Assembly (NCBI RefSeq): GCF_026571515.1
Contig: NW_026856735.1
Location: 124,001 to 188,000, forward strand
Direction of reading: 5' to 3'
DNA: 64,000 bases
From: Ruditapes philippinarum
Taxonomy: Eukaryota
Shown here: positions 3,001-56,344 of the stretch, piece after piece
Layout: each line of letters starts with the position of its first letter
How positions within the stretch are numbered: position 1 is the first letter of the stretch
The notes under the pieces: generated by a model
Told to the model about the DNA's origin: nothing
Databases searched by the model: none
What the model saw: only the letters and a program-made list of their open reading frames with translations
Translations under genes and position numbers: made by a program

Positions 3001-4384
3001 AATGGAACTTAAAAAACAAGAATAAAGATCATAAAGATCAACAAGGCATAGGCAACGTTCACAGGACCCCGCCCCCGGACACACCCAAGCAGGACACCCA
3101 GAAGGCACCAAACAAGCACCCGGAGTGGACACAAGGGCGAGACATGTAATTAAAGACACCTTGAGTGTTGTTACACAAATAATAGCACCGATTTATTTCA
3201 GAGTTTGTTTCGTAATTATCTTGTGAATTTCTGTTTGTTTTTGGTGCCTCAGACATTAATATTTTATGTGTTTTTTTTAGGTTTTTGGACATCAGTGGAG
3301 TCATTGAAAATGTAATATTGCTAATTTACAAAATGTGAAAAAGTGCAGAATTGCAAATTATCTTTTTCCCACTCTTTATAATAGTGCATCTTTCTTGAAC
3401 CATAGCGGAATAAATATAATATCTACCCTAGACAAAGATATGTCCTCTAAATAGGTGCTGCAGGACAAATAATCTTCCCATGATCAATACAAAAAGTTTG
3501 ACAATTTTACCAGCAGGATATCAGGGCGTCTATAATCCGATCACGATCTTTAATGTGTTTGATAAGAAAGAGCTCAGCGTGGTTCAGGTGGACATGTATA
3601 TGTACCAATACATCATAAAAAATGACCTTTAAAGAATTAAACAGCGAAATAAAATATCTGTAGATAAAAATGATAAAAACCTAAGGTCGATCACTAGTTT
3701 ATTCAGCACCTTAGACCTGCGAGTCATGAACTTAATCTTGATGATAACCTTAAAGTAAGAAATAAAGCTGTTACCTGCAAGTATGCCTACAAGCATGACG
3801 AGGGATTGAAAGACGTCAGTCCATATGACGGCCTTGAATCCTCCAATGGACGTGTAGATGATGGAAGACGTTGAGAAGATAAGAATTGATGACCACATTG
3901 GTAGTTTGGCGACTGATTCCAAGGCCAACGCTGTACCATACATAACAATGCCCATGTAGAACGTATAATGGATAACACCTAACGTAACGGCAACGTAACG
4001 TACAGAATTAGTTTTGTAACGTAGAAAATAGTACTCGTACACGCTGGTGACTTTCAGAGGGTGGAATATCGGTACAACAATAAGCGCAGCAAGTAGATAG
4101 CCACAAATGACACCAACACATTGCATGGCATACTGGAGACCATAGGCGTATGCTTCCGCCGGAAATCCCAAAATTAAGATGGACGACTGGAATGACACAA
4201 CAAAAGACAATCCCACTGGCAGCGAACTCAGTTTTCTATCCCCAAGGAAATAATTTTCCGTCGTGTTATGTTTTTTATCCCGTAATGCGAAAAATACTCC
4301 TATTGCAACAGAAATAAATATAAGAAGTCCAAAAACAACAAAATCCGGCACAGAAAATGAGCGTGCGAGCGTTTCGGCGTCCAT
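1..4384 (-). CDS. SLC5 sodium:solute symporter, SMCT/NIS/SMVT-like, copy A (3' end runs off the window)
   Basis: Exon 1 4384-3775 (MDAETLARSFSVPDF...NYFLGDR...GFPAEAYAYG...YTSIGGFKAVIWTDVFQ), donor GTAACA. Exon 2 starts at 669 after a TTTCAG acceptor and reads VLIKTTTNAGG...FDPDPTLRHTFW...GCDPL...PGLPGLFIAALAAASLSTISSGLSSL to the window edge. Phase-1 intron joins in frame. A pyrimidine tract plus AG just upstream of the ATG suggests a further 5'UTR intron. Confidence 0.93.
727..1653. mobile_element. Non-autonomous Tc1/mariner (pogo/Tigger-like) DNA transposon in the intron of SLC5 copy A
   Basis: TA|CAGTAAAAACCCGCT ... AGCGAGTTTTTACTG|TA: imperfect TIR, TA TSD, repeated subterminal GACCA(A/C)CC motifs, no ORF. 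Confidence 0.8.
3015..3146 (-). mobile_element. 3' end fragment of a non-LTR retroelement/SINE
   Basis: GC-rich island. On the minus strand it ends GAACGTTGCCTATGCCTTGTTGATCTTT...TTCTTGTTTT, matching the end of the insertion at 10547-10700. Confidence 0.5.
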
Positions 4385-17000: not shown

Positions 17001-20000
17001 TTACACAAACCGGTCTTTGTGTCGGTTACAACTTTCCATTTGCATCATTCCTTCGCGTTCATACGAATCTGTAGAATCATCACAATCGGAAGTGTTAACG
17101 GAACATCTCCTCTTCAAACATGAAGGTAAAAATATGGACAACGGAAGTACTGTTTTCTCGCTGACTGGTTCAGGAGTTTTCGGCTGAGTAAACAAACTTA
17201 TAATTGTGCTTATAGATATAACCAAGATGCAACCAATCAAATTAAAGTACATATATGATATGGAATAAAATGTTTGTAGACCGGTGCGGTCGGTATCTGT
17301 CGAGGACGACACGTGATCCTGAAGCGTGGACAAATTTGATATGATTGTGCTCATGTTCATTGGTGTTGGTGTTGTCCGATATGTAATAAGTGAACTATTT
17401 GTCGTATCTGATGCGGAACATTGGTCTGTAGGTCCGAGTGGAAGGTATGGCGCTTTTGGCACAGTTGCTGAGAAGTTTTGACCAAGAATTATCCATAAAA
17501 CAAAGCACATTCCAGTAAAGGTACCAACTATTACTGCCTTCGGTCGGGCTCTTCGAAAAAACACTGATATCAGAAAAAGTCCTGCTTCTGGTCCCGTTAT
17601 TGCCCCCATAAATCCAGCCATTATTTGTCCTAAAGGACCTTCTACATTTGATAGAAGAAATGCAAAACCGACGGATATCAGTCCATAAATAGCAACCACA
17701 GCCTTAGATATGTTAGTTCCCTTTTCATCGGAGACATTTTTAAAAAATACTTTTATAAAATCTTCGTACGTTACAGCGGAAAGACTACTTAAACCTGAAG
17801 AAATTGTGCTGAGCGAAGCCGCTGCTAAAGCAGCTATGAATAGACCCGGTAAACCTGGATAATCATGAAACAGCTCAAGCATTGTAAATGGAATTATTTG
17901 ATTCAAATTTTTCACCTGACCCGATGCAAGTGGATCACAACCCTTGTTTGAAAAATATGCAAATATTGCAAGACCTTGAATCATTACCAATATCCACGTG
18001 AATGAGTAAATTGGCGCAGCGATGTAAAATAATTTCCGTGCAGTTGCCATACTCGGAGTTGAGTTGATTCTCTGTATCCCGGCTTGAGTAATTGATAAGT
18101 ACAGAAACTGGGACGGGGCACCAATAACCAGCGTCCAGAATGTATGACGTAATGTGGGATCTGGATCGAAGTTGAAGAAGTTCAGACGAGTCTCACTTAA
18201 CTTGAATACGTTTGACATTCCACCAGCGTTGATTGTACTTTTGACTAACACTGAAATGAATGAAAGTACGATTGATGTTAAACTGCATTTGTTTTAAACT
18301 ACATCATAACTACTAAGGGAGTTTCCAAAGAAATGTTTTGCATATTTTGTGCTTTCAAAGAGTATATTAAAGGCCTAACAGCAGCCTATTGGTATATCTA
18401 TTTCCCTCTAGACANNNNNNNNNNNNNNNNNNNNNNNNNNNNNNNNNNNNNNNNNNNNNNNNNNNNNNNNNNNNNNNNNNNNNNNNNNNNNNNNNNNNNN
18501 NNNNNNNNNNNNNNNNNNNNNNNNNNNNNNNNNNNNNNNNNNNNNNNNNNNNNNNNNNNNNNNNNNNNNNNNNNNNNNNNNNNNNNNNNNNNNNNNNNNN
18601 NNNNNNNNNNNNNNNNNNNNNNNNNNNNNNNNNNNTGCTTCGGTCGGTTTAATGGATCTGTAACTATAATGGTAGGAGACATTGGAAAGTATTGTGTACA
18701 AATTTCTAAAAATGAAAGGCGTTTTGCAGAGAAAAAAAATCAATTGTTCAATAATATATAAGAATAATTCTTAATTATCTTAGCATATATTTCTGTTTAC
18801 AGTGCCCCAGGTCATTTATGTAAGAAATTCATATGTTATTTTTTTAGGCTTTTAAAACCTCAGTGGAGTCCCTCTAATATGTTTATATAAATAAAAGAAT
18901 TTCTTTGCATGACTTCTGTTGCTACACTGTTTATTTTAAATTACCGTAACGTACTTTTAACACAAGTGTGACAATCCATTAAAATAGCATACACGTATAT
19001 AGGTATCCATTTGTTAGAAAATAAGTTGTTTTTATTTGTTTGGGTCGTCAGACCAAACAAATAATGGTAGCGAAATTTCAGACCCTGATGCTGTTAATTG
19101 CAAATGCAGAAAGTAATCCGCTTTTTTGAAGCGGTTACTTCCCTTTATATGTACACTAACGCTGAAAAATTCAGGGGAGATCACTGCGTAAAGATTGTCA
19201 AATGACAGGCGCATTAATTTTCAAGCAAAATATTTGCCGAATGGTCGAAGAATGCTGTATAAAACTGTATTAACACGAGTGTTGTTTTTGTGATGGGCTT
19301 TATATGCATAGTATTCTTCTCTCATCTAACAATCATTTTCGTATATAAGTTAAAATGCTCTTTGAAGTTTTGCGAGAGTGAGCATCCACTTTTTACTATT
19401 TATGTCATACAACCGAACTGTTACTGGTAAAGTCGCCGGGTTTTTTTAATGCATTTATATACCATTACAAAAATATAATTAACCATGATTACGTGTTGAC
19501 TAAAATAGTAGCTTAAGAAGACAAGGCTGAACAACATGCCGTGATAAAAAATTGCATTCTTGCTTTGGAAAGTAAATATAGCTCTTCATAATATATTACT
19601 GGAATATTAGCAGAACAATTCTTTCAAATTATATAAATAAATGAGATGCAGAAAATATGTGCTTTATTGCAAAACTGTAATTGATTAATATTTATAAATT
19701 ACTTAGCATTTAAATAACTGTATTGTGAATGTCAATCTTTCTTTATTTAAAGGTAGAAACAAGTGCTCTACTAAACTTGATATATATTTAAAAAATTGGT
19801 AAAGTTAACGCACGATAGATTGTTTATAAGCCACAATTTACTGCTTAGACAAGAGTGGGCGAGCATAAAGTTTCAGCTCGTATTTTTTTTTGTTTTTTGA
19901 GCTACCTATAATTTAAACATTATGTAATAAAATGGTTTGATGAAAACGTTTTATTAATACATTAATTTCGGGAATTTCTGCCCTGCGTCAAAAATATATC

Positions 20001-22730
20001 TTAACGCGCCATAGTGAGCTAACAGTGGTAAGTATTCATAATCACATAATATATTATAAGGTCTCAGAATATCCAGATGATATGACATTTTTTGTTCGTT
20101 ATAACATATTGTCAATAAAATGCTGCAGTAGAAAAAAAAGTACTTGCAAATAAAATGAAAAAATATGCAATAAATATTTCAGCTGAAATTATCCTACCTA
20201 AATATTTCTATTAAAGCTCAATGAATTAAGATTAAAGATTAAATATTTAAATAAATCTGCTTCAATAACATCATATCTGATCACGGTTTTAATTTAAAGT
20301 TGAGGTATGGTATATGTGAAATTTATTTTGAAGTAAATAATATTGCGTTTTATCACGAAAATATCTAATGTACAAATAAACATTATAATCATACATCATA
20401 CAACAAAGTTACGCAAGGGAAATTTTCTCATTTAATTTTGACAATTTATGCGCAAATGCATTATATATTAATTATTTCGCACATAAAACCCCAAAAACAT
20501 TTGTAAATATTACAGTTTCATTGATATAATTTTACTAGTTTATGTTCCACTACATCAGTTTTAACTATCTTTGAATTTGTAAGCTAAAATGATATTTTGT
20601 CAGTAACATCTTCCTTGATGTCAGCAAGAAATATAACAAGATCTTTGCCAAACGTTTTATTCATCATTAATGCGTGAATGCAGTTATTTGTTACATTTTT
20701 AAATACCATAATACATTTAACTATTCAATAAAGGCATTAATATTTTATATATACCAAATGATATAATGTAAATTTATTAGTCACTTAAGTGACATGACAG
20801 TTTAGAGTAAGCGTCGGTACCGTCTTTTGTCTAAGGTTCTGAATGACCGGGTCACGTCAATCAGTGGGCGGAGCAATCTCTTCTCTGGCGTAATGTCAAT
20901 TGTGTACGCGGTAAATTGATAAAAAGCTAAAAAGCGTGCATATTTAGACGCTAGATTCAAATAACGTTTTCTCGTTGACGTCATTTTCTGTACTATGTTG
21001 GTTTTCTCATGGGGCAGCCCAATTATAACGATTTGGCATCATAATACTTAATGTAAAAACGTCAAATAACATCGTGCATTTCAAATGTTAAATGTTTATA
21101 CTAAATCACATTACTGTTCACGATGTATTGCACAAAAATACATTTTTGATGTTTTTATCAATTTTTGAATTACGAGCCAATTGACAACAGTTACAATAAA
21201 AAGCAAAACTAGGCCGAAAAATGAGTTAAACATAACCGTAAATGTATTAATGTATACGCATTTCTTCTACGTGACTGCTGCAGCAAATACACAAGCCATT
21301 ACCGTGAGGTGAATTGATATTGTTTGTTTTTGTTTTGCTTTTCTTCTGCACTCCACATCTGCGAACAATTCTGACTAATATTCAAATGCGGCGGATAATG
21401 ACCAAGTGAACTTTTGACCTTACTACACAAGCGTTTTAACATAACTAAGAGAGACAATAATAATCATACTTTGATCGAGAAGAAGGTTAAATAAGCAAGC
21501 AAAAAGGATATACAATGGGCAAAATGTAATGAAACAAGATAANNNNNNNNNNNNNNNNNNNNNNNNNNNNNNNNNNNNNNNNNNNNNNNNNNNNNNNNNN
21601 NNNNNNNNNNNNNNNNNNNNNNNNNNNNNNNNNNNNNNNNNNNNNNNNNNNNNNNNNNNNNNNNNNNNNNNNNNNNNNNNNNNNNNNNNNNNNNAAGGTA
21701 CTGATATAAAGATCTCCTTTGTTACACAACTTTGTATTAATTTCTAATGATTAAGAAATTATTTCTAATTCTTATCAAATATATCTTATGATAATAGAAG
21801 ATTATCAATAAAAACAACAACATTTGTGTTTGTTCTCCATCACACCAAGCTTGGTCTTTGTTGTTATAACCGAATACTGTTGTGATAATTATTACATTCC
21901 TGATAGATGTTTTCTTGTTGTATATACAGTACAGTACATGTATATACAGTTTATATCTTCAGGGCTGAAAGAAAATAATGTACTGTTCGTATTTTAGTGT
22001 AATTAAACGTACGCACTGTATTTGATTTACATGTTGTTTGTATTTATGTAATCAATTAAATTAAATGTTGGGAATATATATTATAAAACAGAGAGATAAT
22101 GTCTCTTAAATGATACGTACCTGCAAGTATCCCTACAAGCATGACGATTGATTGAAAGACGTCAGTCCATATGACGGCCTTGAATCCCCCAATTGACGTG
22201 TAGATAATGGCAGATGACGAGAAAATAAGAATTGATGACCACATTGGTAGTTTGGCTACTGATTCCAAGGCCAACGCTGTACCATACATTACAATGCCCA
22301 TGTAGAACGTATAATGGATAACGCCTAACGTAACGGCGACGTAACGTACAGAGTTAGTTTTGTAACGTAGGAAATAGTACTCGTAAACACTGGTGACTTT
22401 TAGAGGGTGGAATATCGGTACAACAATAAGTGCAGCAAGTAAATAACCACAAATGACACCAACACATTGCATGGCATACTGGAGACCGTAGGCGTACGCT
22501 TCCGCCGGAAATCCCAAAATTAAGATGGACGACTGGAACGTGACGACAAAAGATAATCCAACTGGTAATGACCTCAATTTCCTGTTTCCAAGGAAATAAT
22601 TTTCCGTCGTATTATGTTTTTTGTCCCGGAATGCAAAGAATATCCCAATTGCAACAGAAACAAGTATAAGAAGTCCAAAAACAACAAAATCCGGGACAGA
22701 AAATGAGCGCGCGAGCGTTTCCGTATCCAT
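17001..22730 (-). CDS. SLC5 sodium:solute symporter, SMCT/NIS/SMVT-like, copy B (619 aa)
   Basis: Exon 1 22730-22121 (donor GTACGT), exon 2 18250-17001 (acceptor TTTCAG), phase-1 intron, open through the stop. SSF motifs GGFKAVIWTDVFQ, DPDPTLRHTFW, PGLPGLF, SLSTISSG, FYSISYMY. The intron contains two N-gaps, but the paralogs show no exon is missing. Confidence 0.95.
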
Positions 22731-34033: not shown

Positions 34034-35544
34034 NNNNNNNNNNNNNNNNNNNNNNNNNNNNNNNNNNNNNNNNNNNNNNNNNNNNNNNNNNNNNNNNNNN
34101 NNNNNNNNNNNNNNNNNNNNNNNNNNNNNNNNNNNNNNNNNNNNNNNNNNNNNNNNNNNNNNNNNNNNNNNNNNNNNNNNNNNNNNNNNNNNNNNNNNNN
34201 NNNNNNNNNNNNNNNNNNNNNNNNNNNNNNNNNNNNNNNNNNNNNNNNNNNNNNNNNNNNNNNNNNNNNAATTGTATNNNNNNNNNNNNNNNNNNNNNNN
34301 NNNNNNNNNNNNNNNNNNNNNNNNNNNNNNNNNNNNNNNNNNNNNNNNNNNNNNNNNNNNNNNNNNNNNNNNNNNNNNNNNNNNNNNNNNNNNNNNNNNN
34401 NNNNNNNNNNNNNNNNNNNNNNNNNNNNNNNNNNNNNNNNNNNNNNNNNNNNNNNNNNNNNNNNNNNNNNNNNNNNNNNNNNNNNNNNNNNNNNNNNNNN
34501 NNNNNNNNNNNNNNNNNNNNNNNNNNNNNNNNNNNNNNNNNNNNNNTATTATTTAATCGGTATTCATGTTTACTCTCTTAGAAGAATCAATAATTTATAA
34601 TGTTCCTTAAACCCCCTACTTTAAAACTGGCGAACTATTAATTTCAATCTGTTTTATGGTGCGACGCCAAACGCATAAATTGACATGTGGGCATGGAACA
34701 AAGTTTATTGCGTCAACTTTTCACAGTTTCATAACTCTTACAAAACATGGCATGTTCTAGATTTTTCTTTGAATTCATGTTTTAATTAAATATATATTGT
34801 GTATATCAATAACATCTATGTTATGATGTTCACTTATAATTTATCTTTCAATGAACAGTAAAGAGCAGAACATGCGTTTAAAATTAATCATACTATATTT
34901 TTGATCAGTTTAAAAAGATAGCGTAGTTAAATGAAATGGCAAGTAAAAAATCATCCATTGAGAAGGAAGGCAAAATTATTAAGGTTTGATCGGGCGTAGG
35001 ATGTTTATGTAGCTGGGAATGGAAAGATATTTTAGACATGTAGCATGCAAGAGTTAACACGATGAAATATTTGGACAACCCGCTATACCGACAAAATCTC
35101 ATGTGGACATAATCTTAGTTTGCAAGCTGGACAAAATCTTTACGAAAATTCTTGTCAAGTTTAATGTGACATTATGTCCATAAAATGTTTAAATCTCATT
35201 ACTCCTCAATATAATGCATTAATACTTACAGTTTAACAAATTTTGACCACTTGTCGTATTTCAAAGAATTTTTGATTTATTTTGACATTTTGCAACAAGG
35301 AAGTACAATTGTTCCTTACACATATTGTGTGATTTAGCGCATTAAAAAGCGAATTAAACACCTTGATTAAAAATGAAGCTACTTGACCCGGGTTTGTGAA
35401 CTCGTTTGTTCACGTTGTAATCTATTTAGTGTAATGCGATACAAATTTATTTTACTAAGTTAAGACTTTTGTGTTCAAACTATGTTTTGTGTAGGTAAAC
35501 TTTCCTTCTTTTTGAATTCTATTTGCGTATCTTCATTCTTTTTT

Positions 35545-49939: not shown

Positions 49940-51019
49940 TTAATAATTGATAAAAATTCTATCTCATTTTTTATCTCTTATTTTATCATTTAGTTGTTTG
50001 AATTTATTTCAAAAGTTTTGGAAACAAAGAGAAACGTTTATAATCAAAATAAATAGAACAACAAGTTGTATTTTTTTAAATTTAATTCTGAGTAAATTTT
50101 TTCCCATTACCTTTGCATTTTTTTGCCGTGTTCAGTGCCGAAATTTTTTTATATAAGACTTTAAAATTTAATGTTAATGGTTAATAGAACTAAGGAAAGT
50201 TTTTTTTTTTAAGTTAAGGTACCCCAAACCTTTAAATTATTAACTTTTTTTCAAGACAAAGTTTCACTGAGCATCTGTAAATCAATTAATATGTTTTTCA
50301 TTACGTTGCCATATCTTCGCAATTTAATTTTGTCAATATAATTTCATTAATCCTTTTTTTACACCGTGTGAACAGTATATTTGAAATGTTATATACGCTT
50401 TTATATTTACTTATTTCAAAACAAATTCCACGAAATACAAAGTGCGAAGTAGGTTTTTTGACATTGGATTCATTAAGTAATATAATTATAAGAACGTTTT
50501 TATATTTCCATTGCCATATTTTTATATATTATAGCATAAAATCGGCTATTTTTCCCTCTTTTGCCCATGTTATAACGGGACCAAAACCATGTGTTAACAT
50601 AGTCGTGCGCGCTCTTGTTATAGCCCGGTTTCACCTATGCGCAATACATACAGGGCCCAGTAAACAAACAAACAAAAAATGATGATTTGGCCTGTTTGCC
50701 AAAGAGTCATGCGCTCTTGTTATATTGAAATTTATTGATTCGAGGGCCTCAGTCGCATATTCAAGTAACTATGCCGGAAAAACGGCGTATAGACATCGGT
50801 GCTAATCTTGGTTGTCGCCCTTTCTAAGAAACGGACAGTTGTCAATGTAAACAAACACAGTACTGTAGAATGGACCGTTCCGCGACGGATATTTTTAACC
50901 AATGAAAGTGATCCGTTTACTTCAGTGCGGTATTGCTTGTTGCTACCCGCCATCTTGTGCTCACAAGCTTTCACTTGGCAACTGCTACATCAAAAGTAAA
51001 TACCGCGGTTTTATTCAAA

Positions 51020-53844
51020 ATGGTGCGTAGATGTGCTTGGGGAACATACAATGCAGATTGCAGGTATCCTGATAAGATGATTGGGGTCAGATTCATAACA
51101 TTTCCTAACCCTAAAACTCAATTTGAGAAGTGTTTACGGTGGATAAAGGCATGCGCTCGACCGCATGAACAGTTAAATGTCAACAGGATTAACAAAAATA
51201 AAGTCGTGTGTTCAACGGTAAATGAATCTGTAAGAAATGCTGAATTAAACATGAAATGATTTACTTAGCCAGGCTGGCTTTTGATTTCTGTTTGACGTGT
51301 GCCAACATGACTACATGTTGTTGTCAGTTTTTTTGACAGCTCAAAGCAACTTATGAAATAGCCTAGCTAGCTAAATGAGCTAGTCTAGTCTATGCCTGAA
51401 TAATGTTGAGACCAAAACTGGCTATCCTTAAAAATAATTACAAACTGCTCCAAACTTTTTTATATTTTCATAATACATTTTATCTTTGACTCTTGTCAGA
51501 AAATTCATTATCAATTCAGTAAAAAAGGCATATGTTGATGCACCATGCTAAATGGCTAACTTCATGGTTGGTAGACTATAGATTATATGTTACAAAAAAA
51601 TAGTGACCATGAAAATAATATAATTTGCTAGAGGACTGATCTTTAAACCATATTATTAAAATAATATTTGGTTATTTTGTTAAACATACAAAAAATACTA
51701 AAAAGCCATTTTATATTATGACATTATGACCCTTTCAGCCGGATCATCGGCGGATGGTTACTCTATACAGATCTTTTGTTTCATTTATAGATCTATGTCA
51801 TATATAGAGCCCTACCTCCATTATTGTTATTTGTATTTATTCTTTTTTAATCACTTATTCTCATAATTACAGCACTTCATGGGAGAAAATGGACAGTTAC
51901 TTATGCATGGTCATATAACCTGTAATATGTCATACACAATTTAAATATAGTTTGAAACTATACATTTCCATTACTGCAATGTAAGAAAGGATGAGCATAC
52001 TGTTCAAAAAAACTGGCTAATACATTTAGCATATTTGTCATAAATTGAACATCTGGTTCAACACGCTGAACAAACAAGTCAGACTCATTTGGACAATATA
52101 CAATGAAATCACAGAATGAACTACCTGTAATCATGAGCTGCCCTTGAACCTGGGCATAGTATGCATGATTTGATTTCAGTACAACCTGGCCATTCTGATC
52201 AGTGTGTAAAAAGAAATTATTTAATTGGCAGCAAGCATCAGCAACAGTCAAGTCTCTGGCACTATAGGGACATTTTATTTCTATAATCCCTACTTTTCCA
52301 TTATCACAGAGTTTTCCATCTGGGGTTGCACCCAAAAATGGAAACTCATTATTTACAACAAAACCACATTCATGAATGTGTCTTCCTGGAAACTGAGCTA
52401 GATATTTAGACTTGGCTTTGCTCTCATTTCTTTTCCCATAAGATATAGATGGGGCATGAATATCTTTACCGGTAGAAAATAAACGTGACAGTAATTTTTC
52501 ATTAGGGGGAGATTTCCTTAACATGATTTCACCAAAGTTTGATGCTGTAAGCCTGTTTTGTCTAGCTTGATGCCATTTTTCAGACATTGCCTGGTTTCTT
52601 GTACATTGCTCTAATGTCTGTGGATCTGTTATTGTATAATGACTTATCAAGTGCTGAAACTTTTCAGGAAGTCTAATTGGTGATGAGTTTGTGACACAGA
52701 GGTTACCACAGCCATTTGTTGTTACAGGAATCAGTGACTTCAAATTTCTTGTCTGAAATTAAAATGCAGTTATATTATTTCAGAGAATCAAGATGTTCAT
52801 CTACATGAGGAAAACCTGCAGCTAAAGATTCAATTATTGGAGAAAGACAAAGAAATTAATAGACTGAAATCAAAATTACAACATTTGGAAAGAGATATGA
52901 AAAAGAAACAAACATTTTCTGCAGAAGGAATTAGAAATAGGGAAAAGGATATGAAAAACTTGTTTAAATATTACACTGGAATAACTTATGTCAACTTTTT
53001 ATTTTTGTTTTCTTTTTTGTTTCCAAATCCACAAGAAACTGTAAAATATGGTAGGACTGACACTAAGCTACTATCAAATGAAAATGCACTTCTTCTAGTA
53101 CTATGCAGATTGAGACATGATTTTGGACTGAAAGATTTGGCAATGAGATTTAGTTTATATTTGCAGTCAACAGGCATTGTATTTAACAAACTCTTAGATA
53201 TTTTATATTTTAAATTTGGCCAGATTTCACTGTGGCCCCCAAGGGATGATATTATATCTAGAATGCCAGCAGAATTTAGGAAAGATTTTCCTACAACCTT
53301 AATTATGATAGATGGTTCAGAATTCAAAACTCAAGTACCAAATGCATTAGCTCTTCAAAGTCAAATGTACAGTGATTACAAATCATCTACAACTCTTAAA
53401 GCTTTAATTGGGTGTGACCCAAGTGGATCTGTAATTTTTATTTCTGAGCTTTTTACTGGTTCAATATCAGATAAAATGATCTGTGAAGAAAGTGGATTTT
53501 ATGCCATATTGAAAGATTTGTTAAACCATGGTTACATTAATCCAGGTGATGGTATAATGGCTGATAAGGGGTTTACAATACAAGAGGAACTTAATAAACT
53601 TGGCCTTGTGTTAAACATTCCCCCATTTTCTTCTTGTTCATCACAGATGTCTTCATCTGATACTTATTTAACTCAAAAAATTGCCAAACACAGAGTTCAT
53701 GTTGAAAGAGTAATAGCTAAAGTGAAGACATATAAATTGTTGTCTCATAAAATTCCTACATCTTTATTTAAACAAGCTAATAAGATCTGGTCTGTTTGTG
53801 CAATTCTTACATTACATCAGAGAATATTTGTAAAAGACAAATAA
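51020..53844 (+). CDS. ISL2EU transposase (THAP, HTH_Tnp_4, DDE_Tnp_4); N-terminal part possibly damaged
   Basis: Exon 1 51020-51217 (MVRRCAWGTYN..FITFP..RWIKAC..VCST, donor GTAAAT). Exon 2 starts at 51873 (TTACAG|CAC TTC, completing CSTHF) and its end is uncertain. Last exon 52784-53844 has a coiled coil, YYTG, LLLVLCRLR..DLAMRF, and the catalytic IDGSE, ADKGF and RVHVERVI motifs. Confidence 0.88.
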
Positions 53845-55733
53845 CTGAGTTGCAATAACATTTGTTTAACAAATAATAACATACTACTGCAAAATTAGTA
53901 GTTATGTTATTACTTGATTGATTTTGGATGAATTTGTATTAAAGATATACTATGCTCAAATTTGATATTAGAAAATATTGATAATTAGTACATAGTAAAT
54001 ATAAAATAAACATGTATTGACTTCACACAAAGTAGATATGTTATGTTTAAAATTCTACATACTATAGGTGGTCACAATATGAATATACATGTATAGTGTC
54101 ATTACAAAAACTGGCATTTTTTTAAAGAAAAGAACAACTTTACTTGACCTGTTCAAGGGAATGCAGCTTCCTATACATAGTTTATTCAATCTTTTATCCA
54201 AATTCAACATATTTAGTAAGAATATCATAGATTTCAATGAATTTCTGTGATTAAAACATTTTACCTAAGAATGAGCAATTCAATTAAACCTTATGTATAT
54301 TACATAGATGTTAAAATATTGTATCTACAAATATATTACCTGATATGACAGAAATGAACCAAGCTGAACTTGACCAAGATCTGTTGTAACTAATGGCCTC
54401 TTTGATGAGAGAAGGTATTCAAGAGGTGTGCCTTTGGCCCCTTTTAACTGCTCTATATCTTTGCTGGTAACCTCTGGAAGCCTGTAATTTATGTGAAAGA
54501 TTTCATAAATTAAAACATTTTAACAAATTTTATACATGTAAAATGTACAAGTATCTGACATTATTGTTAAAATTTATATAAGTAAAACGCCTAAATGGTT
54601 ATAGTTATGTAAGATAAATAAAGAAGGAAATTTTAAAAACATATTTGTAGTTACTTTTTACTTTGTTTAAAATCTTACTTGTACTGAGTGTCAACTTGGC
54701 AAAAAACTGGTTTTCTCTTCCTTGTCTCACAAGCTTTGGCCACCACAACATGGTTAAGTGGGACAGGCTCTATTTTCTCTCCTCTTGGAACATGCCATTG
54801 TTGGGGCACACTTGTACAGCTCAACTGGTCAGGTACATTACTGATGTTGTGTAGTTTCAGTCCTTGAAGGGTTTTTACTAGACCAATAATGTGGGAACAG
54901 TGGCCTGTTAATCTGAAATATACAAGACTGCACATTATTATTGTATCAAATAGTGATTCAACAATGATGATGATAAATCATGAGGATGATGATGATCATC
55001 ATTTTTGTTATCATTAGATCTTTTTTGATTAAGTTGACAGAAAAAATTCACCATGACTCTTTTATCTGTCTATACAGTAAATCGTTTTTACAAAAGCACG
55101 AAAATGTTTCTACAAGACTACATCAGACTCTGTACAATTAGGCCTATTCAAGGATGGTTAAATATATATTTTTTTCTGCATTGAAGAGAATAAATAAAAA
55201 ATCCGACATAGTTATTTAATAAAAAGATCTACATAATGGTGTATAGTCTATACATTTTTTTTATATTTTTCATTTATTTATTTTATTCTATTTTATTAGA
55301 TTATTATTTTTTTTTTTTTTTGGAAAGTGGGAGGGGTGCAATTCATTTTTTATTCTAAAATAGAGAAATGCAGTATCCCCAAAGAAAGCCTACTTAATTA
55401 AGTTGTTGACAATTTTACGTACTCGATTACTTACCCAACCTTACAAGAGCAGTACGACTCTGTTATAGTATCTTTAAGAATCTCAATGTGTAGCGTGTGC
55501 GGCTTTTCGTTTTTCCTCATAGATCTCCAACACCGAGCAACAACCTTTACCTTGGGTTTATCGTCAATATGAACCCTAATTTGATGGACATAGCCTTGTA
55601 GATAGTAATTTAAACCTCTTTTTATAATCCTTTCCATAAGACTTCTATGATTAGGTAGAAAACTAATAGATATATTATCGGGTACATCTTCTAGCGAGTC
55701 GGTTGTTGTTGATGAAACAGGTACGGCCGCCAT
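51958..55733 (-). CDS. SWIM zinc finger plus YqaJ (lambda-exonuclease family, PD-(D/E)XK) protein of the ISL2EU element, 489 aa
   Basis: Exons 55733-55435, 54912-54679, 54481-54340 and 52752-51958; all GT-AG, phases 2/2/0 consistent, 1470 nt. SWIM motif CSCKVG|LTGHCSH spans intron 1. Also SCTSVPQQWHVP and GSFLSYQ, then YqaJ motifs WHQARQNRLTASNFG, YGKRNE, FLGATPDG, IEIKCP, YYAQVQGQL. Confidence 0.92.
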
Positions 55734-56344
55734 TTTGGATGCTGGCTTGTGAGGCATAGCAACAATCACTAGGGATTGCGCAATAGGCGGAAATAATCGG
55801 AACGGTCCATCTACCTGTCATTCAGTTTAACACTCCGATTAACTTACAAAACTAGATAACACAAAATTAATATGAGAAAATGTTTTTTATTTATGTTTAT
55901 GTTGATAAATGCTCTTTATATTTCTTTGAGAGAATAATGCTTAGTGCCTGATTTTTTTGTAAACTTGTTTGCTTGAAAAAAAAAACGATTCTGAATCTGA
56001 TGTCACTGATCTATATGATCTTTTTCTACCGTCAATCTGAAATCATTCTAAGAATATCTGAGGGTCGTGTTTTGTCTTGGGTAGAGGGTAGAGTAATGTA
56101 ACGTTGTTTTTTTTTTTCTTGAGATAATAAATCTCCAAAGGCCAAGCTTTCTTAAATCAATTAAAATTCAAAATTTCGTTCGGTTCCGAGAATTTTCCAA
56201 GTTGTTGGCCCCGGAAAAATGAAACGCATACGTAAAACATAGAATTGGATAAATACCGTCCAAGCACAAGAATTTAATGTAATCGTGTTTTGTATAAACT
56301 ATACATCACGAATCTGTTTGAAAATTTTATGCTATGATAGCGTC

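What the first reader, a model, noticed from the sequence alone, without database searches (positions are those of the whole stretch)
50872..55808. Two-gene transposon with mutually interleaved antisense genes: transposase and SWIM-YqaJ exonuclease each carry the other's catalytic exon in an intron
Seen: the order is THAP ex1(+), ex2(+), YqaJ nuclease exon(-), HTH-DDE exon(+), then YqaJ-gene ex3, ex2, ex1(-), bounded by perfect TIRs and an AT TSD. Both genes start near the ends and run convergently past each other, so the pre-mRNAs are complementary over at least 1.9 kb covering both catalytic domains while the coding exons do not overlap. Established: ISL2EU elements pair a THAP-DDE transposase with a YqaJ exonuclease, whose role in transposition I do not know to be resolved. 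Inference: the crossed layout couples the genes by transcriptional interference or nuclear dsRNA and hinders loss of one gene without the other. The 5'-3' exonuclease may resect donor or target ends. I cannot confirm whether this layout has been described before.
Basis: partly seen in the sequence, partly recalled or inferred. Interest (0 to 1): 0.85.

Follow-up and report, generated by a model that had tools for sequence, protein, structure and literature searches.

The report
Clam transposon with two interleaved genes
This is a copy of an ISL2EU "cut-and-paste" transposon of the Manila clam in which the transposase gene and the nuclease gene on the opposite strand each keep their last, catalytic exon inside the other's last intron. 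The layout is real and conserved across a whole clade of such elements, but this particular copy has a broken transposase gene.

Summary
The crossed layout is real. Window 50872-55808 is an ISL2EU transposon of Ruditapes philippinarum with 11-bp perfect TIRs and AT duplications. At least 9 sister copies sit in unrelated flanks.

RefSeq models map at 100% identity to the predicted exons. On sister copy C4356 both genes are annotated and interleave: T1-T2-T3(+), Y4(-), T4(+), Y3-Y2-Y1(-).

The window copy is not an intact two-gene element. An 830-bp deletion removed most of transposase exon 2 and all of exon 3, and a THAP zinc ligand is mutated (C10Y).

The layout extends beyond this family. Four divergent families in this genome and 26 metagenome contigs share it. 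On a transposase tree the 16 crossed loci form one clade (SH-aLRT 99, one change). Forty-six other loci here and 27 metagenome contigs have the simple tail-to-tail, mostly intronless layout.

No RNA data could be obtained. Coupling by transcriptional interference or dsRNA is untested, and single-gene loss does occur. The open literature I could search describes only "two ORFs". The scan noted the same layout on another piece of this genome.

The parts
50870..50871 (.). left target-site duplication AT
   Evidence: every copy is flanked by AT on both sides, with unrelated DNA beyond
50872..50882 (+). left terminal inverted repeat GGACCGTTCCG
51020..51217 (+). transposase exon T1 (THAP N-terminal part, 66 codons, donor ACG|GTAAAT); C10Y in this copy only
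51873..51892 (+). 20-nt stump of transposase exon T2 (acceptor ACAG|CACTTC; completes the THAP C-x2-H). The 830-bp deletion junction lies at 51892/51893; the rest of T2 and all of T3 are missing.
51958..52752 (-). exon Y4 of the SWIM-YqaJ gene: linker plus YqaJ/lambda-Exo-like nuclease with PDG...EIK motif, stop TAG at 51960-51958
52753..52783 (.). 31-bp spacer between the two back-to-back 3' splice sites (CTGAAAT...ATTTCAG)
52784..53844 (+). transposase exon T4: coiled linker, HTH_Tnp_4, DDE_Tnp_4; open frame; stop TAA at 53842-53844
53939..54277 (.). about 340-bp stretch that also occurs as a separate high-copy repeat elsewhere in the genome. It lies in the transposase 3' region and in intron 3 of the nuclease gene.
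   Evidence: more than 30 other loci at 82-85% identity
54340..54481 (-). exon Y3 (acceptor TTACAG|G, donor CAG|GTAATA)
54679..54912 (-). exon Y2 (second half of the SWIM motif, GHCSH)
55435..55757 (-). exon Y1 from the ATG (first half of the SWIM motif, CSC; donor GG|GTAAGT)
55798..55808 (-). right terminal inverted repeat
55809..55810 (.). right target-site duplication AT

Best explanation
The stretch is an internally deleted copy of a mobile ISL2EU DNA transposon family of the Manila clam.

Shown:
- In the intact family members both genes have four exons. The THAP-HTH-DDE transposase gene starts at the left end on the + strand. The SWIM-YqaJ 5'-3' exonuclease-like gene starts at the right end on the - strand.
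- Each gene's last, catalytic exon lies inside the last intron of the other gene.
- The two acceptor sites stand back to back, 31 bp apart.
- Each primary transcript must therefore run antisense through the other gene's catalytic exon, for at least 1.9 kb of overlap. The coding parts of the mature mRNAs do not overlap.
- The architecture is inherited across a clade of ISL2EU elements.
- The window copy keeps perfect ends, an open DDE exon and a complete nuclease gene. It lost transposase exons 2b-3 and a THAP zinc ligand.

Inferred:
- The window copy can at best be moved in trans.
- The crossed layout arose once from the ordinary tail-to-tail, intronless layout. The likeliest route is a tandem duplication of the central [DDE> <YqaJ] segment, followed by splicing to the inner copies and loss of the outer ones.
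- It then persisted because nothing selects for uncrossing. Forced convergent transcription (interference, possibly dsRNA) is a consequence of the layout, not necessarily its reason.
For: - TIR, TSD and independent insertions.
- Domains.
- RefSeq models:
  - XP_060592904.1 (LOC132747520, 497 aa) maps on the four minus-strand exons of the window.
  - XP_060589406.1 (501 aa, THAP-HTH-DDE) and XP_060589407.1 (494 aa, SWIM-YqaJ) both lie on contig C4356. They map at 100% identity on copy L036 in the order T1 449-646, T2 1262-1423, T3 1900-1983, Y4 2975-2184(-), T4 3006-4064, Y3 4714-4574(-), Y2 5158-4925(-), Y1 5889-5575(-).
- All junctions are GT-AG.
- THAP and SWIM zinc motifs are each split across exon 1 and exon 2.
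- Homologues from other animals are collinear over all exons.
- Oyster relatives occur as 517-aa full-length proteins on contigs of about 2.0-2.1 kb and as 359-aa DDE-only ORFs on longer contigs. A 485-aa SWIM-YqaJ protein sits on 1.55-1.74-kb contigs. These fit spliced transcripts.
- Two copies (L035, L036) have all eight exons open. Copies differ by as little as 0.7-1.5%.
- Conservation of the layout:
  - Four divergent families in this genome are crossed and 46 loci are simple.
  - Among metagenome contigs, 26 are crossed and 27 are simple.
  - The transposase tree needs one change of layout, and the crossed side has SH-aLRT 99.
- Simple relatives have single ORFs of 449-507 aa facing ORFs of up to 981 aa.
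- Back-to-back CAG acceptors are kept in crossed relatives.
- Copy L033 carries a partial duplication of the central Y4-T4 segment, so such duplications do happen.
Against: - Splicing therefore rests on RefSeq gene predictions, homology, canonical sites and contig-length arithmetic.
- The tree is unrooted, so 'derived once' assumes the root lies outside the crossed clade.
- The layout in the named species of that clade (Saccostrea, Pinctada, Pecten, Ylistrum, Glandiceps, Branchiostoma) was not seen directly.
- The duplication route has no remnants to support it.
- Nothing measured bears on whether the layout affects expression.
Confidence: 0.85

Rival explanations
1. The interleaving is a selected regulatory device. 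Obligatory convergent transcription makes the two pre-mRNAs interfere or pair as nuclear dsRNA. This ties the dosage of transposase to that of the nuclease, or feeds small-RNA self-limitation, and that is why the layout is kept.
For: - The layout is retained across deep divergence: DDE identity falls to about 45% within the clade and path lengths exceed 1 change per site.
- The head-to-head acceptor arrangement is kept, with spacers of about 31-135 bp.
- The antisense overlap of at least 1,887 bp covers both catalytic exons.
Against: - No expression or small-RNA data exist.
- Once crossed, a layout is hard to uncross without killing a gene, so retention needs no benefit.
- Most ISL2EU lineages do well with the simple layout.
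- Single-gene loss still happens, in the window copy and in L039.
Confidence: 0.2
2. The exons are not joined as drawn. The DDE and YqaJ exons are independent genes driven outward from an internal bidirectional promoter, and THAP and SWIM are separate small genes. Alternatively, the order is the product of one element nested in another.
For: - Each catalytic exon contains an internal in-frame Met upstream of its domain.
- Prokaryote-style gene callers report DDE-only and YqaJ-only ORFs.
Against: - The spacer is 31 bp and is flanked by CAG acceptors on both strands.
- Sequence conservation runs to the 5' edge of both exons and continues into the upstream exons in collinear homologues and in intronless single-ORF relatives.
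- Zinc motifs are split over exons 1 and 2.
- There is only one TIR pair per copy, and 10 copies share the same order.
- RefSeq joins the exons.
Confidence: 0.05
3. The window copy still makes a shortened transposase, using a cryptic donor in the exon-2 stump (CATG|GTCATA at 51909/51910). That donor would keep the frame into exon T4, so this copy would be autonomous.
For: The phase fits: one base is carried over, as for the normal T3 donor. The GT is created by a C-to-T change specific to this copy.
Against: - The donor is weak.
- The product would lack the PPPKRRRL motif and about 75 residues of linker, and it would carry C10Y in the THAP finger.
- RefSeq has no transposase model on this contig in the protein cluster examined.
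- A frame match has a one-in-three chance.
Confidence: 0.05

Closest known systems
ISL2EU transposons (PHIS / Harbinger-like superfamily) as described in Han et al. 2014 (PMC4122938), Han et al. 2015 (PMC4482050) and PMC9179366
   Same: [quoted passage not shown]
   Different: Those papers speak of 'two ORFs' and say nothing of orientation, introns or interleaving. Here both genes have three introns and cross each other. The simple convergent, mostly intronless form is the one found in 46 other loci of this genome and 27 metagenome contigs.
PIF/Harbinger two-gene transposons (transposase + Myb/SANT protein)
   Same: Both have a related DDE_Tnp_4 transposase, and two genes are needed or carried between short TIRs.
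   Different: The second gene is a nuclease with a SWIM motif, not a Myb-like DNA-binding protein. The TSD is 2 bp AT rather than 3 bp TWA. The genes are interleaved.
Interleaved or mutually nested antisense gene pairs in host genomes (for example those listed in Drosophila genome annotation; from my own knowledge, not checked here)
   Same: Exons of two opposite-strand genes alternate along the DNA, and each gene has an exon in an intron of the other.
   Different: Here the pair is the complete coding content of a mobile element, moves as a unit, and has been kept through the radiation of a transposon clade. The two 3' splice sites are only 31 bp apart.
Lambda exonuclease / LHK-Exo (PDB 1avq, 3syy)
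   Same: The C-terminal 200 residues of the minus-strand protein align with these enzymes, including the PDG...IEIKCP catalytic motif.
   Different: It is fused to an N-terminal 230-residue part with a CxCx7CxH (SWIM-like) motif, and it is encoded by a eukaryotic transposon. No partner annealing protein is present.

Membership tests
ISL2EU transposon | DDE transposase of the DDE_Tnp_4 (PIF/Harbinger/IS5-like) type with an HTH | tested here: met
   PF13359 E=4.7e-39 and PF13613 E=4e-07; all invariant columns of the alignment are present in the window sequence.
ISL2EU transposon | THAP domain at the N-terminus of the transposase | tested here: met
   P0001 scores 28.6 bits against the THAP model (cut-off 23.9). 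The window's exon 1 alone scores 20.2 bits. The window copy has C10Y and lacks the end of exon 2.
ISL2EU transposon | second gene encoding a YqaJ exonuclease-domain protein | tested here: met
   PF09588 at 53-55 bits (cut-off 22).
ISL2EU transposon | 2-bp AT target-site duplication and TIRs beginning with GG (PMC4482050) | tested here: met
   AT on both sides of the window copy and of the six sister copies whose two termini were both recovered, with GGACCGTTCCG termini.
ISL2EU transposon | transposase groups with named ISL2EU reference sequences in a phylogeny | not tested
   No Repbase reference sequences were available. The tree holds only relatives found here.
YqaJ / lambda-exonuclease (PD-(D/E)XK) nucleases | catalytic D...E-x-K motif in the conserved fold | tested here: met
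   alignment to 3syy with PDG and IEIKCP matched. The window has ATPDG...IIEIKCP.
YqaJ / lambda-exonuclease (PD-(D/E)XK) nucleases | 5'-3' exonuclease activity | not testable with these tools
   This needs a biochemical assay.
SWIM zinc finger | CxCxnCxH motif recognised by the family model | tested here: inconclusive
   The motif CSCKVGLTGHCSH is present across exons Y1/Y2. Pfam PF04434 gives no hit for P0274 and a sub-threshold 17.3 bits for the Dreissena homologue. UniRef names two homologues 'SWIM-type domain-containing'.
Mutually interleaved antisense gene pair | each gene has an exon inside an intron of the other, on opposite strands | tested here: met
   RefSeq models of both genes on copy L036 show this. 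The window's own minus-strand model spans the DDE exon. RNA proof of the junctions is lacking.

The most novel reading that the evidence does not exclude
The crossed layout is a built-in regulatory circuit of a transposon clade. Each gene can only be expressed by transcribing antisense through the other's catalytic exon. Transposase and nuclease output are therefore tied together, or the element limits itself through dsRNA-derived small RNAs. The back-to-back 3' splice sites sharing one 31-bp spacer would make splicing of the two transcripts mutually dependent.
Probability: 0.2. Interest if true: 0.8.

Novelty: new variant of a known kind. Interest (0 to 1): 0.6.

Why it matters
ISL2EU elements are known, and the role of their YqaJ nuclease is still open. 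What appears undescribed in the literature I could search is an entire, old lineage that carries its two genes interleaved and antisense, with back-to-back acceptor sites.

This gives a natural system, with both crossed and uncrossed relatives in the same genome, for asking three questions:
- whether convergent transcription and antisense overlap regulate a transposon's own genes;
- how such interleaving arises, possibly by duplication and reciprocal loss;
- how two 3' splice sites can share 31 bp.

It also matters for annotation. ORF-based TE pipelines will see two head-to-head 'genes' lacking their DNA-binding parts and will mis-score such elements as defective.

Tried and rejected
I could not look at the genomic loci of the oyster, scallop, Dreissena, Glandiceps or amphioxus homologues.
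The other ISL2EU families of this genome were therefore compared by match coordinates and strands only, not by sequence.
- I did not search with a joined (spliced) model of my own. Exons were searched one by one by reference, and full-length comparisons used database proteins (RefSeq models) instead.
- The inverted-repeat finder at its default length missed the 11-bp TIR, so the TIR was read directly.
- Rejected: nested insertion of two elements, because there is one TIR pair and 10 copies have the same order.
- Rejected: an internal bidirectional promoter, because of the 31-bp spacer with acceptors on both strands.
- Rejected: the 830-bp difference as an insertion in the other copies, because the extra DNA encodes conserved exon 2/3 sequence found in other species.
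- No tRNA-like part was found in the 340-bp internal repeat.
- No microhomology was evident at the deletion junction.
Full report
**What is in the window.**
- The window is G000:C5222:124001-188000 of a 1.4-Gb genome.
- The genome is Ruditapes philippinarum.
- At 50872-50882 and 55798-55808 lies a perfect 11-bp inverted repeat, GGACCGTTCCG, flanked on each side by AT.
- Nine further full-length copies and several fragments exist.
- In the six sister copies whose two termini were both recovered, the same termini are flanked by AT and then by unrelated DNA. These are independent insertions with a 2-bp AT duplication.
- This matches the published ISL2EU signature: target A|AT|T, TIRs beginning with GG, and a THAP-HTH-DDE transposase plus a YqaJ protein (PMC4482050, PMC4122938).

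**Domains and exons.**
- Pfam finds four things:
  - THAP in 51020-51217(+);
  - YqaJ in the minus-strand frame 52743-51961 (E=1.2e-14);
  - HTH_Tnp_4 and DDE_Tnp_4 in 52837-53844(+) (E=4.7e-39);
  - nothing significant in the two minus-strand frames near the right end.
- Those two frames carry the halves of a CxCx7CxH motif: CSCKVG at the end of the first and LTGHCSH at the start of the second.
- The RefSeq protein XP_060592904.1 (LOC132747520, 497 aa) is this copy's own minus-strand gene.
- Its four exons are 55757-55435, 54912-54679, 54481-54340 and 52752-51958. All have GT-AG borders, and together they make 1,494 nt, which is 497 codons plus the stop.
- Its third intron (54339-52753) contains the whole DDE exon.

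**The transposase gene.**
- On sister copy L036 (C4356), RefSeq annotates XP_060589406.1 (501 aa, THAP-HTH-DDE) and XP_060589407.1 (494 aa, SWIM-YqaJ) as neighbouring genes.
- Both map at 100% identity. In element orientation the order is:
  - T1 449-646
  - T2 1262-1423
  - T3 1900-1983
  - Y4 2975-2184(-)
  - T4 3006-4064
  - Y3 4714-4574(-)
  - Y2 5158-4925(-)
  - Y1 5889-5575(-)
- The transposase therefore has four exons, not three, and its last intron contains the whole YqaJ exon.
- The THAP C-x2-H is split over T1/T2 (VVCST|HF).
- The acceptors of Y4 (52752, minus strand) and T4 (52784, plus strand) are back to back, separated by 31 bp: CTGAAAT...ATTTCAG.

**State of the window copy.**
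- All nine other copies have about 830 bp between window positions 51892 and 51893.
- That DNA encodes the rest of exon 2 (GPTDKYPDPLPADGS...PPPKRRRLD...) and exon 3. Both are conserved in oyster, pearl-oyster and scallop proteins.
- The window copy therefore carries a deletion.
- The window copy alone also has Tyr in place of the second THAP zinc cysteine.
- Its DDE exon and its entire nuclease gene are open.
- A weak in-frame cryptic donor exists at 51909/51910. I give it little weight.
- Two copies (L035 at C6232 and L036 at C4356) have all eight exons open. Several copies differ by only 0.7-1.5%. The family has been active recently.

**Are the exons really joined?** I could obtain no RNA reads. 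The case rests on the following.
1. RefSeq models exist for both genes.
2. All junctions are canonical.
3. Zinc motifs are split across exons.
4. Proteins of other animals are collinear over all four exons of each gene. For the nuclease gene these come from Haliotis, Tegillarca, Dreissena, Glandiceps and a Syngnathoides model. For the transposase they come from Saccostrea, Pinctada, Pecten, Ylistrum, Branchiostoma and Glandiceps.
5. Intronless relatives in this genome and in metagenomes have THAP+DDE as one ORF (449-507 aa) and SWIM+YqaJ as one ORF. An example is a 576-aa frame on C10917.
6. In an oyster family of the same clade, full-length 502-517-aa proteins were called on contigs of only 2.0-2.1 kb, while 359-aa DDE-only products were called on longer contigs. 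A 485-aa SWIM-YqaJ protein was called on 1.55-1.74-kb contigs. This is what spliced transcripts beside genomic DNA would give.
7. A 31-bp spacer leaves little room for an internal bidirectional promoter. Crossed relatives keep CAG acceptors at both edges of a spacer of roughly 31-135 bp.

I made no search with a joined model of my own. Exons were searched singly by reference, and database proteins served for full-length comparisons.

**How widespread the layout is.**
- *Within this genome.* I cross-referenced the coordinates and strands of matches to the YqaJ exon, DDE exon, THAP exon and SWIM exon.
  - Besides the 10 copies of this family, four divergent families have the YqaJ exon upstream of, and opposite to, the DDE exon. 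They are on C10829, C8526, C644 and C15782, with DDE identity of 27-49%.
  - C10829 and C8526 show the full order THAP(+), YqaJ(-), DDE(+), SWIM(-).
  - Forty-six other loci have the simple convergent order, and none have the two genes on the same strand.
- *In metagenome contigs.* Among 80 contigs fetched with a DDE alignment:
  - 15 show YqaJ(-) directly upstream of DDE(+), four of them with THAP(+) further upstream;
  - 11 show SWIM(-) directly downstream of DDE(+) with no room for a YqaJ exon between;
  - 27 show the simple order DDE(+), YqaJ(-), SWIM(-).
- *On the tree.* On a maximum-likelihood tree of the transposase (63 rows, quick search), the 16 crossed rows lie on one side of a branch with SH-aLRT 99. 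They sit with the proteins of Saccostrea, Pinctada, Pecten, Ylistrum, Glandiceps and Branchiostoma. One change of layout suffices, against a shuffled mean of 12.7. The nearest outside rows (L056, L057) are simple.
- *Caveat.* The tree is unrooted. Calling the crossed layout derived assumes that the root lies among the many intronless simple lineages.

**How it probably arose and what it does (inference).**
- A strand-preserving swap of two central segments cannot come from an inversion.
- The simplest route is a tandem duplication of the central [DDE> <YqaJ] block, giving T-D1-Y1-D2-Y2-S. Splicing of T to D2 and of S to Y1 would follow, and then loss of D1 and Y2.
- This route would place the two new acceptors side by side at the duplication joint, as observed.
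- Copy L033 carries a partial duplication of just this central block, so the first step is not exotic.
- Once crossed, the layout cannot easily be undone, so its long retention does not by itself show a benefit.
- Its unavoidable consequence is that each pre-mRNA is antisense to the other over at least 51958-53844 (1,887 bp).
- In intact copies the first poly(A) hexamer after the nuclease stop lies beyond exon T3. If it is used, the nuclease 3' UTR would also overlap T3.
- Whether this produces interference or dsRNA is untested.
- The idea that crossing prevents loss of one gene alone is not borne out. The window copy lost only transposase exons, L039 lost only SWIM exons, and L040 lost both catalytic exons together.

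**The nuclease.** The last 200 residues align with LHK-Exo (3syy, E=1.5e-09) and lambda exonuclease (1avq), with the PDG...IEIKCP motif matched. A 5'-3' exonuclease acting on transposon or target ends is plausible, but its role in ISL2EU transposition is stated to be unknown (PMC4482050).

**Comparison with what is known, and novelty.**
- The element meets every ISL2EU feature I could test.
- The papers I could read describe 'two ORFs' and do not mention orientation, introns or interleaving. Repbase entries could not be consulted.
- RefSeq already holds both crossed gene models as 'uncharacterized proteins'.
- I therefore rate it a new variant of a known kind. It is a structurally unusual, clade-wide gene arrangement, solid at the DNA and annotation level and unproven at the RNA level, with an open functional meaning.
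- The scan's first readers noted the same layout on another piece of this genome, and a tail-to-tail ISL2EU on a third piece. Both agree with the survey here.

Noticed in passing
window 53939-54277: About 340 bp inside the element (transposase 3' region, and intron 3 of the nuclease gene) also occurs at more than 30 other loci of the genome at 82-85% identity without the rest of the element. It is a separate short high-copy repeat, either captured by or derived from this family. No tRNA-like part was found.
   Followed up: partly
window 52753-52783: A 31-bp spacer bounded by CTGAAAT / ATTTCAG serves as the 3' splice-site region for both strands. Crossed relatives keep CAG at both edges, with spacers of about 31-135 bp.
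   Followed up: partly
L033 (G000:C13109:75449-83271): This copy carries an extra, partial duplicate of the central YqaJ-exon/DDE-exon block (window 52202-53179 equivalent, 95.6% identity) beside a more degraded full block. It is an example of the central duplication that could have produced the crossed layout.
   Followed up: partly
G000:C10917:37892-39298 and 46 loci listed: The same genome holds many more distant ISL2EU lineages with the simple tail-to-tail layout. It also holds a 576-aa single ORF with SWIM and YqaJ that has no DDE match nearby.
   Followed up: partly
P0127 (Syngnathoides biaculeatus 'syntaxin-binding protein 1b isoform X4'): This RefSeq model fuses a Sec1 fragment to a complete SWIM-YqaJ protein. 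It is probably an annotation chimera caused by an ISL2EU insertion in a fish gene.
   Followed up: no
window 18415-18635, 21543-21694, 34034-34269, 34278-34546: These are runs of N (gaps or masked stretches). I left them untouched.
   Followed up: no
L040 (G000:C11763:6884-9872): This is a rearranged short derivative of the family that joins the left 550 bp to shuffled pieces of the right half. Both catalytic exons are lost together.
   Followed up: no
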